Below the pieces are notes generated by a model, which saw nothing but the letters and a program-made list of their open reading frames with translations, had not been told where the DNA came from and did not search any database. A stretch of 64,000 nucleotides of DNA from Lytechinus pictus (lineage: Eukaryota): positions 21,514,001-21,578,000 of the forward strand of contig NC_087251.1 of the NCBI RefSeq assembly GCF_037042905.1. Direction: 5' to 3'. Below, piece after piece: positions 12,001 through 18,000 of this stretch. The translations under genes were made by a program, and so were the position numbers. How positions within the stretch are numbered: the stretch's first letter is position 1; each line of letters starts with the position of its first letter.

Positions 12001-15000
12001 TTTCTCTTATTTATCATTCATGATTCAGCATGAGAACTGATCTTACCATTCGGAATACCTTTTGGACCGTGACAGTTGGAACCTTTATGACAACCTTCCA
12101 TGCATTTGGGATGAACCAAGCCATAGCTCAGAGATGCCTCAGTCTCGGCTCCGTCCAAAAAGCAAAACGGTATACTTATTAGTATAATGATGGTGGTGAA
12201 TGTATTTTAAGTGATGATGATGATCATAATGATGATCATGATCATGATAATGGTGTTGGTGGTGAATTAGTGATCATGATGTTGAGAGCTATAATGAAGA
12301 CAATGATGGTCTAAGCATTTTTGTTTTCATTCTAGGTCTACGGTGTTTTTCTTTTAAATTTCTATTATTTTGTATATCATTGTATCTTACAGCAATTTAT
12401 CTTTTATCATATTTAATTTGACCTTATCTTGTAAAATCTTCTCTTGAAAACTTTTAGATAATAATAATCTTATATCCGCCTTTTTTTATTGTAAGGTTTC
12501 ATGATTTCATGCTTTTTCATCATACTAATCATTTGTAAATATTGTGATTGTTATGATTTATTTCAATAAAAACTTAAATATAAAAAAAAACTTCTCTTTT
12601 CTTTATTATATCCTCCATTTAGCATGTTCCGTCATGTATGTTTTCATTTGGTCATTATGATGTCATCAAAATGTTTTGCTCTTTTCATATCTCAGTTGAT
12701 CTTATCTCCTTATCATCTTATCGTATTTCGCCCTGCCCAAATCTCGTCTTTGCTTGTTTAGTCTGATTTGATTGTTCTATTTCTCATGTAACAGGGCAAT
12801 AGGAGTTGCAGTGCTAGCTGAATGGGCTGTCATTATACTCATGGGATTATCTGGCGTGGTGATGTATTCATATTACTTTGATTGTGATCCGTACACTGAT
12901 GGCAAAGTCTTCAGCCCCGATCAGGTGAATCTCTATCATATTTATATGATCCCCCTTTGAGATTCAGTATGTGTCAAAATAAAGGTAATCCCAATTTAGT
13001 CTGCTAATATAAAAGAATCATTGGATATTTCAATATATTAGCTTTGATAGCGGGAATTACATGGTTACATGTGGAACGTATTACGCGTATATCAAGTTGT
13101 TTTGGGTTTGGTGTTTTGTTTTTGTAGATGTTTTTTATGTTTTTGAATTCATGCTGCTGTATTTGACTATGAATCATGCGATGATGTCTTTTTTTTTCGC
13201 GGAAATTACACGTATACATGGAACCTAACATGGCACTCGAATGATAATCTTGACGGAAATGAGAATAATGAATTTATTGTTGCTCGGTCGGGTTTTCTTT
13301 TGGTAACGCGAAACGTCTTACTTTATTTATCAGTGCATGGGTAGCGAGGATTTAGAAAGTTGGGAAAATGTTATAAATGTAACTTTTAACAAGAAAAGTT
13401 TTAAATCAGAGTGTCATCGTTCTTTGTGTGTGTTTTTTTTTATTATTGTTTTTTTTTTCATTCATTGTACACATAATAACAACAAGAAAGTATTTCTTCG
13501 TTCTTTCCTTGTTTTCCAGAGCGAGAAACTTCTGGGTTTAGTAATAAATTTAATCTCCATGACGATCCTAGCTTACATATTTCTCAAATTTCTCTGCTTG
13601 CAGATCATGCCGTACATGGTGATGGAGGTGTTCGCTAAGACGCCCGGTATCCCAGGAATCTTTTTGTCTTCCGTTATCAGTGCTTCCCTCAGGTATGGAA
13701 TTTTCCTGTCTTTACTTCTTTGTGCTTCTCTCAAGCAAGGAACCTTCTTGTATTCACTTCTTAGTGCTTCTCCCAGGCAAGGAATCGTCTTGTATTTAGT
13801 TCTTAGTCAGTGGTTTGCGCTTGGAAAATATAAAGAGTCTTGAATACTAGAAGTACTGTTTTGTAGGCTTTGTAGGCTATTCTCTGACGGACAGATCATG
13901 TAAGTAAGGAATCTTCTTGTCTTCGGTTCCTAGTGCTTCTCTCGGGTCAGGAATCTTCTTAAATTCAGTTCTTAGTCCTTCTCTCGGGTCAGGAATCTTC
14001 TTGTGTTCAGTTCTTAGTCCTTCTCTCGGGTCAGGAATCTTCTTGTATTCATTTCTTAGTTGCTCTCTCGGGTCAGGAATCTTGTATTCGTTCTTAGTTC
14101 CTCTTTCGGGTAGAGAGACTTTTTGGCTTCAGTTCTTGGTGTTTCTCTCGCGTAAGAAATCTTCTCATCTTCAGTTCCTCAGGTAAGGAATCTACTTGTC
14201 TTCAGTTCTTATAGTCCTTCCCTCTGGTAAGGAATCGACTTGTCTTCAGTTCTTAGTCCTTCCCTCTTGCAAGGAATCTACTTGTCTTCAGTTCCTAGTC
14301 CTTCTCTCGGGTAAGGAATCTTTTTGTCTTCTGTTCTTAGTCCTTCCATCTGGTAAGGAATCTACCTGTCTTCAGGTCTTAGTCTTTCCCTCTAGTAAGG
14401 AATCTACTTGCCTTCAGTTCTTAGTCCCTCCCTCTGGTAAGGAATCTACTTGTCTTCAGTTCGTAGTCTTTCTCTCAGGTAAGGAATCCTCTTGTCTTCT
14501 GTTCTTAGTCCTTCTCCCGGGTAAGGAATCTACTTGTCTTCAGTTCTTAGTCCTTCTCTCGGGTAAGGAATCTTCTTGTTTCTGTTCTTAGTCCTTCCCT
14601 CTAGTGAGGAATCTACTTGTCTTTAGTTCTTAGTCCTTAGTCCTCTGGTAAGGAATCTACTTGTCTTCAGTTCTTAGTCCTTCCCTCTGGTAAGGAATCT
14701 ACTTGTCTTCAGTTCTTAGTCCTTCCCTCTGGTTGTCTTCAGTTCTCAGTCCTTCTCTCGGGTAAGGAATCTTCGTGTCTTCTGTTCTTAGTCCTTCCCT
14801 CTGGTAAGGAATCTACTTGTCTTCAGTTCTTAGTCCTTATCTCGGGTAAGGAATCTTCTTGTTTCTGTTCTTAGTCCTTCCCTCTGGTAAGGAATCTACT
14901 TGTCTTCAGTTCTTAGTCCTTCTCTCTGGTAAGGAATCTACTTGTCTTCAGTTCTTAGTCCTTCCCTCTGGTAAGGAATCTACTTGTCTTCAGTTCTTAG

Positions 15001-18000
15001 TCCTTATCTCGGGTAAGGAATCTTCTTGTTTCTGTTCTTAGTCCTTCCCTCTGGTAAGGAATCTACTTGTCTTCAGTTCTTAGTCCTTCCCTCTGGTAAG
15101 GAATCTATACTTGTCTTCAGTTCTTAGTCCTTCCCTCTGGTAAGGAATCTACTTGTCTTCAGTTCTTAATCCTTCTCTCGGGTATAAGGAATCTTCTTGT
15201 TTTCAATTCTCAGTGATTCTCTCAGGTAAATAATCTTGTTGACTTCAACGGTTAGTGCTTGGAATATATAAAAAGTCTTGAATACTAGATGTACTGTTTT
15301 GTAGGCTATTCTCTGACGGACAGCTATGTGTGTGTCAAAAAATATTTCTAATCGCCACTATTAGCGTTTCGTAACATACACATTTTAATACATTATGTCT
15401 TTTCTATTCTTCTATTCAATCTCAATTTTAATCAATATCTCACAGTACCCTTTCTTCTGGTCTGAACGCTATGGCGGCCGTAGCTGGAGAGGACATAATC
15501 AAGATTTTGTGGCCAAGAATCCAAGAGAAAACCTACACTGCAATTTCAAAGCTTCTGTGTATGTCTATCTTTGTCATTTCTTTTTACTGTTGCACTACTC
15601 AATACATTGTTTATGTGATATCTCCAGTCCACTATAAATAAAATTCCGGTCCATCGTGATTTCATATTATCATTTTGTCACTGAGATAAGGATGAGTTGC
15701 AAGATAAATGTATATAAATCAATGTTGATTATTTTTCAAATTGAGGCTCAATTGAGCAATAGTCTCCCTTGGAACAACTTGGAATCAAAGATCAAGTCCA
15801 CCACATAAAAGTTCATTAGAATCAATAAAGAAAAATCAAACAAGTAACGCTAAACATTTCATCAAGAAAGTTATGACATTTTAAAGTTTTGCTTATATTT
15901 TACAAAACAATTATATGCACAACTCGGTGATCTACAGATTCGACAATAAGGACCCTCTTCCACATGTTCAGGGAGAAGTAAAACTTAGTTTCACATTTAT
16001 AAAATACAAAAGATGTAGTGAGTGGGTGATGTCATCGGTACCCTTATTTGCATACTGACTAGGATGTGCATACAGCGCGTCCCCCAAAAAATGTCCCTCT
16101 TATATGCGACTAAATTACTTCAAAAAATAAAAATTATTCTCAATGAAATGTATGGAAATAGGAAGCTCATGTGATGTTCTAACTTCTGTAAAAATGTAAT
16201 TGGTATCGCTTCAGTGGTTTTGAATACACAGTCTATTATGTTACAGTGGTGCTTTTCAGCCCATTCCAAGTTTGCATGCATGCATCACTACTGTGTGTTC
16301 TGCACTTTCTAGCATATCAACCCCATTTGACCATTCTGACCAAGGAATTCCCTGATCTGACCAGGGAAATCTCCATGATCTAACCAGGCTCATCAAATCA
16401 CAACATTGAGCATGTTCAGAAGGGCAAAACAATATTTGACAGCTCATTTCATGTTTGAAAACGGGAGATGCACAGTGATTAAGACAACGGGTCATGTCTG
16501 TTTCATGCCTAATTCATGCATAATTCATGCCTAATACTGCATTTTTGTTTCATTACTTTTTTTTATAGTTAATAAGCTACTGTGGTCAAGTTAATTCAAT
16601 TTAACTTTTTAAAAGAAAAAAGTCAAATTTTTCTCTGGTAAAGTTCCTTGTTCGCAAAGGGTGATTAATTTGTGGATTCCCCTTTATTTTTCAGCTTATT
16701 TTACTCATCCATCATTCACATTTTCTTTCAAGTTGGTGTGCTGATTCCCCTTGTCAATCATTAAAAAAACCTTAAATTTGTTATGTCTCTTGTCCTTCTG
16801 AACATGCCCAAGTTTATGATTTGATGAGCCTAGATGTGATAGGGAAATGTCCCTGCTCAGATCCTGGATGTAAAAATGGGGGTTAACATGCCATAGACAA
16901 TGCAGATATGCATCAATTCTGCAAACTTGGAATGGGCTAAAATGCACCACTGTTACGTAACAGAGTGAGTATTCAAAACCGCTGAAGTGCGACCAATGAA
17001 ATTTTCATAGAAGTTATATCATGAAATGAGCTTTCTACTCATGAACATTTATTTGACAATACTACCACAATTCAGAATTAATTCAGTCCTATGTCAGAGG
17101 GACATTTTTTTTGGGACGCGCTGTATAACTGTTTTGTGAAAATAAGCAACACTTTAGAATGTCATGACTTTCTTATTTTACATTCGACTTTGAGGAAATT
17201 TTCATTGTTGTACTTGTTGTAGTTTTCTCTTTTTATTAAAATCAAGTGTTTGGTAGATGGACTTGTACTTTTAATATTTTTATATCAGTTTTGATGTTTG
17301 TACTTGATTACCATTCATTATTTGCAATGTACCCGTATATGTCCATGGTATACATTTTCAACGCTCGTCTTATGATTAACATCAATTAAGTATCTTCTAA
17401 ATCAATTCCGTAATACACCGTAAAATGCAATATATTGAGTGGGAAACGGGTTGAAAATATTATTTGACTATCGTAATTCCTTTTAGAATAATCGCTGCAT
17501 CACTGGACATATATATCGAATCACTCCTTTATTGTTAATTTAAATACAAATTCATAAAAATACTAGTCTCCTTATGTACACTTCCTTTCATTCTTTCTCT
17601 GCATGGAAAAGGTCTTGTGTTTGGATTTCTGGCCATTGGGGTTGCTTTTCTTGCCATGGGAATGGGAGATCAAGTTCTAGAGGTAAATATGAGTGATTTT
17701 TTAAGCATCCAAAATATTCAAGGAATTGGGGGGCTAGGGGCACTCCCCCCCCCCCCCCCGGTCATTCAAAGGGGAACGTGTTGCTTTGATATACTGGAAA
17801 TAACACACTGTCCCACAGTGTGTGTCACAATTTGTTCACAGTGTGGAACACAATGTGAAATCAACTTCACACTTAAATTTGAGCATTTCAACAGTGTGAA
17901 TCACATATTCACATAGTCGACCATGTGAACAGTCATACTGTCGCGGTATCCACAGTGTAAAAATATCTTCACAATGTTGAAATTGAGAAATTAGCAGTGT

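What the first reader, a model, noticed from the sequence alone, without database searches (positions are those of the whole stretch)
13655..15250. Minisatellite born from an exon end plus its splice donor: about 30 decoy 5' splice sites in one intron
Seen: the first 42-bp unit (13655-13696, GGAATCTTTTTGTCTTCCGTTATCAGTGCTTCCCTCAG|GTAT) is the last 38 coding nt of the SLC5 exon (GIFLSSVISASLS) plus the donor. The array consensus GGAATCTACTTGTCTTCAGTTCTTAGTCCTTCCCTCTG|GTAA aligns to it without gaps. The two copies next to the real exon have GT changed to GC (AAGCAA, AGGCAA). Middle copies read GGGTCAG. Distal copies carry G|GTAAGG, which fits the intronic consensus better than the true GTATGG, and in exon frame they end in TGG TAA. 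Inference: the gradient suggests selection disabled the competing proximal donors while distal ones expanded. The array could act as a U1 decoy or a length-variable control on splicing or NMD.
Basis: partly seen in the sequence, partly recalled or inferred. Interest (0 to 1): 0.82.

Follow-up and report, generated by a model that had tools for sequence, protein, structure and literature searches.

The report
Intron minisatellite copying a splice donor
One intron of a sea-urchin transporter gene holds about 35 tandem 42-base copies of the preceding exon's end plus its splice signal; the array is real and old, but this kind of repeat is already known from human genes, and the cell still splices at the genuine first site.

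Summary
A 42-bp minisatellite (window 13655-15256) starts in register inside the last 38 nt of an SLC5/SMCT exon plus its donor. Its consensus matches the exon end at 33/42; the best of 123,012 other 42-mers reaches 24.

New here:
- The window is Lytechinus pictus.
- The array lies in two blocks, each followed by the same ~70-bp tail.
- L. variegatus has the array in the same intron. The tandem paralogue and S. purpuratus share the intron but have no array.
- The inferred founder unit keeps the ancestral exon codons, and the living exon has since drifted at synonymous sites. So the array came from the exon and is several times older than the species split.

RNA contigs from two runs and three NCBI models show only the canonical 13692|15446 junction, although 21 pseudo-donors pair with U1 better than the true donor. 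All of those lie beyond an in-frame TGA.

The kind is already described in human F7, IFI6, CBS, LMNB2, PDGFA and ABCA7. The scan has also noted it at three other loci of this genome (VPS13, BROMI, FARP).

Selective loss of the nearest donors is suggestive only; a decoy or NMD function has no support. Verdict: a new member of a known kind, of modest interest.

The parts
13604..13692 (+). Host exon (89 nt) of the SLC5A8/12-like sodium-coupled monocarboxylate transporter gene; it encodes IMPYMVMEVFAKTPGIPGIFLSSVISASL(S)
   Evidence: RNA contig joints 12924|13604 and 13692|15446 in runs X1 and X5. tblastn with P0002/P0003 gives 93% identity. PF00474 is recorded for the homologues.
13655..13696 (+). 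Unit 1 of the minisatellite: the last 38 exonic nt plus GTAT of the authentic donor (CAG|GTATGG, cleavage after 13692)
   Evidence: Predicted U1 duplex is -7.7 kcal/mol.
13697..13812 (+). Block A: pseudo-units 2 (13697-13738, CAA|GCAAGG) and 3 (13739-13780, CAG|GCAAGG), plus a partial unit 4. The reading frame stays open through them.
   Evidence: Unit 2 is 38/42 identical to L. variegatus unit 2, which keeps GT.
13819..13894 (+). Tail A: an L. pictus-specific duplicate of the unique sequence that follows the array. It holds the in-frame TGA at 13841-13843 and a 9-bp internal duplication. It is followed by CAT|GTAAGT at 13900.
   Evidence: An exact 34-mer occurs at 13836 and 15274. Alignment. 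L. variegatus has only one tail.
13904..15229 (+). Block B, about 31 units: a GTCA subfamily (13908-14075), degenerate units (14076-14186), the homogenised main subfamily with G|GTAAGG donors (14187-15185), and an exon-like edge unit (15186-15229)
   Evidence: TRF: 32.5 copies with higher-order periods 125, 167 and 450. Unit parsing. Donor table. X5 contigs are colinear with 13776-13993 and 14017-14393 with 0 mismatches.
15230..15256 (+). Decayed last unit
   Evidence: The orthologous stretch in L. variegatus is L004 39841-39867.
15257..15323 (+). Tail B: the original unique intron sequence after the array. It begins with GGAAT at 15261, the same pentamer that begins the unit.
   Evidence: Conserved in L. 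variegatus. Unique intron identity between the species is 93.6%.
15324..15445 (+). Rest of the intron, with the polypyrimidine tract and the acceptor AG (15444-15445)
   Evidence: Joint 13692|15446 with GT..AG ends.
15446..15558 (+). Next exon (TLSSGLNAMAAVAGEDIIKILWPRIQEKTYTAISKLL)

Best explanation
This is an intronic minisatellite of the 'first monomer spans the exon-intron boundary' type.

Origin. A 42-bp segment was tandemly duplicated early in the history of this SLC5 (SMCT-like) gene. The segment was the last 38 nt of the exon plus GTAA of its donor. The duplication came after the split from the tandem paralogue and well before L. pictus and L. variegatus separated.

Turnover. The array has since changed by slippage and unequal exchange. 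The centre is young and homogenised, and both edges are old and decayed. Each species has added larger rearrangements of its own. L. pictus duplicated [units + tail]. L. variegatus has a 270-bp insert and a ~758-bp segmental duplication.

Function. The array has no demonstrated function. Splicing uses the authentic, most upstream donor. That is the first donor met downstream of the 89-nt exon, which matches what minigenes showed for human F7. Any transcript using a block-B donor would carry the in-frame TGA at 13841 and should be removed by NMD.

Shown versus inferred. Shown: the structure, the origin, the age, presence in two species, and the canonical junction in steady-state RNA. Inferred: that the pseudo-donors are silent at the pre-mRNA level, and that the array is neutral.
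For: Structure and statistics.

RNA:
- One mRNA contig in each of two runs (X1 depth 35, X5 depth 101) joins 13692 to 15446. No contig uses an array donor.
- Array depth is 0 in X1 and 2-3 in X5, against 35-101 on the exons.
- NCBI models P0018, P0134 and P0135 all read SASLS|TLSSG.

Origin and age:
- The founder unit differs from the host exon at 5 exonic sites, 4 of them third codon positions (P = 0.027). Private changes among intronic units show no such bias.
- The paralogue and S. purpuratus agree with the founder at positions 9, 18, 22 and 24.
- Both Lytechinus host exons share the derived 18C, 22A, 24C and 33C.
- Old units differ from the founder by 10-17%, whereas the unique intron differs by 4-6% between the species.
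- The main subfamily markers 28C and 37T occur in both species.

Distribution: the same intron in L. variegatus holds about 25 pseudo-units. The paralogue (L002) and S. purpuratus (L003) have the same intron position and no array.

Donor choice: 21 pseudo-donors pair with U1 better than the true donor, yet only the first is used. This matches F7, where pseudo-sites with higher complementarity do not compete (PMC1557585).

No masking structure (z = +1.29) and no Rfam family.
Against: - Contigs drop rare variants, and NMD would hide PTC-bearing isoforms. Low-level use of array donors is therefore not excluded.
- The two raw-read RNA runs had no reads on this gene, so there is no read-level junction census.
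- Persistence of the array in two species, and recurrent loss of GT in the nearest pseudo-units, could reflect selection.
- Neutrality is inferred, not tested.
Confidence: 0.8

Rival explanations
1. Selection has specifically knocked out the pseudo-donors nearest the true one because only those compete. It is compatible with the best explanation as an added layer.
For: - L. pictus GT-less pseudo-units are numbers 2, 3 and 12 of 34, so P = 0.005 that both proximal ones are GT-less if the events are independent.
- L. variegatus's only GT-less unit is number 3, hit by a different base change (T>A). Unit 2 shares a -1 G>A in both species.
- L. pictus unit 2 lost GT after the species split.
- In human IFI6, CBS and ABCA7 it is the nearest pseudo-sites that are used (PMC1557585; PMC5954066).
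- In L. pictus these two are the only pseudo-sites that would give in-frame, NMD-immune products (+14 or +28 aa).
Against: - There are only 3-4 events, and they may be linked by conversion between neighbouring units.
- The proximal units are simply old (5-7 changes in 42). Allowing for that gives P of about 0.01-0.07 by my rough estimate.
- Distal edge units are decayed too.
- CAG|GCAAGG is close to the consensus of functional GC-AG donors, so 'disabled' is only relative.
- L. variegatus tolerates a GT at unit 2.
Confidence: 0.3
2. The array is a selected regulatory element: a U1 sink or decoy, a protection against premature polyadenylation, or a length-dependent rheostat on splicing or NMD, as in ABCA7.
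For: - The array has been kept in two species with more than 20 strong U1-complementary sites each.
- ABCA7 VNTR length correlates with downstream exon skipping and with expression (PMC5954066).
- The units are CU-rich, so PTB-type binding is possible (inference).
Against: - Only the canonical junction is seen.
- Donor positions are no more conserved within units than other positions: mean minor-allele share is about 0.12 against 0.08.
- Array content turns over freely and differs between the species.
- The paralogue and the S. purpuratus gene work without it.
Confidence: 0.08
3. Units reading YAG|GTAAGG act as recursive (ratchet) splice sites, so the intron is removed in steps without leaving a trace in the mRNA. 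This is the other first-stage note on this stretch.
For: CAG|GTAAGG preceded by a pyrimidine run occurs at 14183 and 14479, and CAG|GTAAAT at 15226. Stepwise removal would give the same final junction as observed.
Against: The intron is only 1.75 kb, whereas known recursive splicing serves introns of tens of kb (established knowledge). Only 3 of 34 units have the AG. No intermediate junction was seen.
Confidence: 0.03
4. The repeat is a transposon-borne satellite or an assembly artefact that only resembles the exon by chance.
For: Tandem arrays carried by mobile elements are common in marine invertebrates (established knowledge). The tail is duplicated.
Against: - The match of 33/42 far exceeds any control, and the array continues in register from the exon.
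- The founder carries the ancestral codons.
- The unit is absent from the rest of the window and from L002 and L003.
- Array depth in RNA contigs is near zero, while the real dispersed repeats next door reach thousands.
- Two independent species assemblies and X5 contigs agree.
Confidence: 0.01

Closest known systems
Human F7 intron 7 VNTR (37 bp, 5-9 copies; Borensztajn et al. 2006, PMC1557585)
   Same: The first monomer spans the exon-intron boundary, so the donor recurs through the intron. Only the most upstream donor is used, even when pseudo-sites pair better with U1.
   Different: F7's monomer takes only 4 exonic nt, and its pseudo-sites are identical to the true site. Here the unit takes 38 exonic nt, there are about 34 pseudo-units, the units have diverged, the true donor is now weaker than 21 of its copies, and the host is an echinoderm. 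Silence of the pseudo-sites was shown experimentally for F7; here it is only inferred from steady-state RNA.
Human IFI6 (6-16) intron 2, CBS intron 13, LMNB2 and PDGFA intron 4 minisatellites (as listed in PMC1557585)
   Same: All are junction-spanning minisatellites with 10-25 reiterated donors. LMNB2 and PDGFA use only the authentic donor.
   Different: IFI6 and CBS also use the two nearest pseudo-sites. Here the two nearest pseudo-sites carry GC instead of GT, and no such isoform was seen.
Human ABCA7 intron 18 VNTR (25 bp; De Roeck et al. 2018, PMC5954066)
   Same: The VNTR begins with the exon's donor. Use of the first pseudo-donor gives a premature stop.
   Different: In ABCA7, the length effects on exon 19 skipping and on expression were measured. 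Nothing of the kind has been measured here.
Other exon-end-plus-donor arrays noted by this scan in the same genome (VPS13 s1-294483, BROMI s1-322130, FARP s1-317548)
   Same: Same architecture in the same species. The FARP note also reports synonymous-biased divergence.
   Different: Different genes and unit lengths. I did not examine those loci.

Membership tests
Junction-spanning intronic minisatellite (F7 IVS7 type) | Head-to-tail array with a unit of roughly 10-100 bp inside an intron | tested here: met
   TRF period 42, with 3.7 + 32.5 copies.
Junction-spanning intronic minisatellite (F7 IVS7 type) | The first monomer spans the exon-intron boundary, so the donor is reiterated | tested here: met
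   The RNA joint places the boundary at 13692|13693 inside unit 1. The match is 33-34/42 and in register.
Junction-spanning intronic minisatellite (F7 IVS7 type) | The authentic, most upstream donor is the one used in mature mRNA | tested here: met
   mRNA contigs in X1 and X5 and three NCBI models. Rare use of pseudo-sites cannot be excluded from contigs.
Junction-spanning intronic minisatellite (F7 IVS7 type) | Copy number varies (VNTR) | tested here: inconclusive
   Copy number and internal order differ between L. pictus (34 pseudo-units) and L. variegatus (25). Variation within the species was not measured.
Junction-spanning intronic minisatellite (F7 IVS7 type) | Pseudo-sites become active when the upstream site is destroyed | not testable with these tools
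   Needs a minigene or genome editing.
Transposon-borne satellite | The same unit is dispersed at many loci with element termini | tested here: not met
   All 24 matches in the window lie in this intron. L002 and L003 hold none beyond the exon end. RNA contig depth on the array is near zero. The whole genome was not scanned.
Intron gain by tandem duplication of an AGGT-containing exon segment | The intron is absent from paralogues and orthologues | tested here: not met
   The L. pictus paralogue and the S. purpuratus gene have an intron at the same codon position.
Recursive (ratchet-point) splice sites | A juxtaposed 3' and 5' splice site (Y-tract, YAG|GTAAGT) in a very long intron, with splicing intermediates | tested here: inconclusive
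   The motif is present in 3 units. The intron is only 1,753 nt. No intermediates appear in the contigs, and no nascent RNA was available.
Decoy 5' splice site silencer (P-element IVS3 / RSV NRS type) | The pseudo-5' splice site binds U1 and lowers use of the authentic site, and is kept by selection | tested here: inconclusive
   U1 complementarity is present, but donor positions are not preferentially conserved and the canonical junction dominates. Binding cannot be tested here.

The most novel reading that the evidence does not exclude
Two linked ideas are not excluded.

(1) The nearest pseudo-donors have been inactivated repeatedly and independently in two species: L. pictus units 2 and 3 by T>C, L. 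variegatus unit 3 by T>A, and a shared -1 G>A in unit 2. That would be natural evidence outside mammals that only the closest copies compete with the true donor.

(2) Sea-urchin genomes may spawn such exon-end-plus-donor minisatellites unusually often. The scan has noted four loci in 785 windows. That could point to a mutational bias at exon 3' ends rather than ascertainment alone.
Probability: 0.15. Interest if true: 0.55.

Novelty: new member of a known kind. Interest (0 to 1): 0.3.

Why it matters
This is a clean natural counterpart of the human F7 and ABCA7 donor-repeat loci, in an animal that can be bred and edited in the laboratory. It has 34 pseudo-donors, 21 of them predicted to bind U1 better than the real one, and the message is still spliced at the first site.

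Comparing the two Lytechinus species shows the true donor weakening (GTAAGG to GTATGG) while the canonical junction is kept. That supports 'position beats strength' outside mammals.

The array also acts as a molecular fossil. It preserves the exon's ancestral codons, which dates the array and shows which way the copying went.

None of this changes current understanding. It adds an invertebrate example and a possible model locus.

Tried and rejected
- A fuzzy-regex parse of the array timed out and was replaced by stepwise global alignment.
- The raw-read RNA runs X6 and X7 had no reads on this gene's exons, so no read-level junction census was possible. Read laying is capped at one call.
- A single-exon search of the representative library was needed because a spliced protein cannot be passed by reference. 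It gave P0002.
- L001, fetched as a presumed orthologue, turned out to be the window's own locus, identical over 13000-16000. It is therefore not independent evidence.
- Searching with P0018 found no orthologue beyond Lytechinus. The L. variegatus orthologue came from the 90% cluster listing.
- Rfam found nothing near threshold, and folding gave z = +1.29.
- The scan index returned nothing by sequence.
- Considered and rejected: a TE-borne satellite, intron gain by duplication, and seeding of the array from the paralogue's exon. The founder lacks the paralogue-specific states 6A, 30C and 36T.
- I did not read the letters under the window's N runs in L001.
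Full report
**What is there.** Tandem Repeats Finder reports a 42-bp period at 13654-13807 (3.7 copies) and at 13904-15247 (32.5 copies, 81% matches, with higher-order periods of 125, 167 and 450). A 23-mer from the unit, allowing 3 mismatches, occurs 24 times in the 64-kb window, and all 24 are inside this intron. 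Stepwise alignment resolves 35 units. An almost identical tail follows each block, at 13819-13894 and at 15257-15323. An exact 34-mer occurs at 13836 and 15274, and tail A has a 9-bp internal duplication.

**The exon boundary is real.** Assembled RNA contigs from two runs of the same species (X1, 2,765 nt, depth 35; X5, 1,998 nt, depth 101) join 12169|12795, 12924|13604, 13692|15446 and 15558|17612, all with GT..AG ends. Unit 1 (13655-13696) is therefore the last 38 coding nt plus GTAT of the authentic donor. Homology identifies the gene as a sodium-coupled monocarboxylate transporter of the SLC5 family (PF00474).

**More than chance.** A consensus built from block B alone matches unit 1 at 33 of 42 positions without gaps. 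The best of 123,012 other 42-mers in the window, on both strands, reaches 24. The best of 100,000 shuffles reaches 26.

**Organism and relatives.** The window is identical over 13000-16000 to Lytechinus pictus GCA_037042905.1, chromosome CM073232.1 (L001).
- A tandem paralogue about 25 kb upstream (P0002, L002) has an intron at the same codon position. That intron is 531 nt and holds no array.
- The S. purpuratus gene P0003 (L003) also has the intron and no array.
- The L. variegatus orthologue was found inside P0018's 90% cluster (P0135, L004). It carries the array in the same intron: about 25 pseudo-units in an intron of 1,608 nt, against 1,753 nt in L. pictus. It has a single tail, a 270-bp non-repeat insert and its own ~758-bp segmental duplication.
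- A protein tree gives (Diadema, ((Lp host, Lv host), (Lp paralogue, Sp))) with support 99/98 and 90/91, and a long stem leading to the host gene.

**Direction and age of the copying.** I inferred a founder unit by majority over six old unit lineages. It still translates to GIFLSSVLSASL.
- It differs from the L. pictus exon at positions 9, 18, 22, 24 and 33 and at intron +4. Four of the five exonic differences are at third codon positions (P = 0.027). Private changes among the intronic units show no such bias.
- At positions 9, 18, 22 and 24 both the paralogue and S. purpuratus agree with the founder, not with the host exon.
- The founder lacks the paralogue-specific states, so the array was not seeded from the paralogue.
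- Both Lytechinus host exons share the derived 18C, 22A, 24C and 33C. L. pictus alone has 9T and the donor change GTAA to GTAT.
- Old units differ from the founder by 4-7 of 42 positions (10-17%). The unique intron sequence of the two species is 93.6-96% identical.

So the array was born from the exon in its ancestral state, several-fold earlier than the species split. The living exon then drifted under coding constraint. The main subfamily (28C, 37T) already existed in the common ancestor. The duplication of tail A is specific to L. pictus.

**Donors and reading frame.** The true donor CAG|GTATGG has a predicted duplex of -7.7 kcal/mol with the U1 5' end.
- Of the 34 pseudo-units, 22 have GT and -7 kcal/mol or better, and 21 are stronger than the true site (CTG, CGG or CAG|GTAAGG, from -8.5 to -11.5).
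- Read from the exon, the frame stays open through block A and stops at TGA 13841-13843. Every block-B donor would therefore give a premature stop.
- Only 13735 (CAA|GCAAGG) and 13777 (CAG|GCAAGG) would give in-frame products, of +14 and +28 aa.
- In L. variegatus the true donor is the optimal CAG|GTAAGG, and an in-frame TAA sits at the very start of the intron.

**What the RNA shows.** Only the canonical junction appears in the contigs. Array depth is 0 in X1 and 2-3 in X5. The X5 pieces are colinear with 13776-13993 and 14017-14393 with no mismatches, so they are unspliced RNA or DNA, and they also confirm the assembly. The NCBI models for both species read SASLS|TLSSG. Contigs drop rare variants and NMD would hide isoforms with a premature stop, so rare use of array donors is not excluded. 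The two raw-read runs had no reads on this gene.

**The gradient.**
- In L. pictus the GT-less pseudo-units are numbers 2, 3 and 12. The probability that both proximal ones fall among 3 of 34 is 0.005 if the events are independent.
- In L. variegatus the only GT-less unit is number 3 (T>A). Unit 2 is weak through a -1 G>A that it shares with L. pictus.
- L. pictus unit 2 is 38/42 identical to L. variegatus unit 2, which keeps GT, so that loss is recent.

This is suggestive, and it fits human IFI6, CBS and ABCA7, where the nearest pseudo-sites are the ones used. But the events are few and possibly linked. The proximal units are simply old. The distal edge is decayed as well. CAG|GCAAGG also resembles functional GC-AG donors. 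Within units, donor positions are not better conserved than the rest. No RNA structure hides the sites (z = +1.29), and no Rfam family lies in the intron.

**Comparison with what is known.** Borensztajn et al. 2006 (PMC1557585) describe this architecture in human F7, where the first 37-bp monomer spans the exon 7/intron 7 boundary. They list IFI6, CBS, LMNB2 and PDGFA as further cases. In F7, fifty minigene constructs showed that the pseudo-sites are functional but that the most upstream site is chosen, even against better U1 complementarity. De Roeck et al. 2018 (PMC5954066) describe the ABCA7 VNTR. It begins with the exon 18 donor, its first pseudo-donor is used at about 2%, and its length correlates with exon 19 skipping and lower expression. 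The scan has also noted the same architecture at VPS13, BROMI and FARP in this genome. I did not examine those loci.

**Verdict.** The exon-to-array origin is strongly supported. The selection gradient is suggestive but unproven. A decoy or NMD function is unsupported. This is a new member of a known kind. It is a tidy natural model for donor choice in an echinoderm, and of modest interest.

Noticed in passing
window 25660-29391 (- strand): Two long adjacent ORFs, 933 aa with reverse-transcriptase-like motifs (25660-28461) and 291 aa that looks like an endonuclease (28516-29391). They look like an apparently intact non-LTR retrotransposon downstream of the transporter gene.
   Followed up: no
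window 15743-17318: The next intron holds stretches with very high RNA-contig depth (up to about 3,500, against 35-101 on the exons), with many variants and loose ends. These look like expressed dispersed repeats.
   Followed up: no
window 3682-4624: A 41-bp tandem array rich in GGCGCC motifs, with about 20 copies and higher-order periods of 103, 124, 227 and 257.
   Followed up: no
window 3248-3310 and 6809-6871; ORFs 6554-6742 and 7167-7355: The same 33-bp tandem repeat occurs twice about 3.5 kb apart, and two near-identical 62-aa ORFs (differing only in the last two residues) lie 613 bp apart. This points to local segmental duplications upstream of the gene.
   Followed up: no
window 30023-30704: A 188-bp tandem repeat, 3.6 copies, 73% matches.
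   Followed up: no
L004 38899-39160 (L. variegatus): A 270-bp non-repeat insert interrupts the L. variegatus array. It has a poly-C run and ends in GAATT repeats, so it may be a small mobile element. It is absent from L. pictus.
   Followed up: partly
window 13655-13843: In L. pictus the reading frame runs open for 62 codons from the exon through three units. Three separate changes each removed the in-frame TAA that ends the unit (GTAA to GTAT, GCAA, GCAA). In L. variegatus units 1 and 2 keep the TAA. This may be chance or a side-effect of donor loss.
   Followed up: partly
window 15261 and 13655: Tail B begins with GGAAT, the same pentamer that begins the repeat unit. This could be the microhomology used by the first slippage event (inference).
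   Followed up: no
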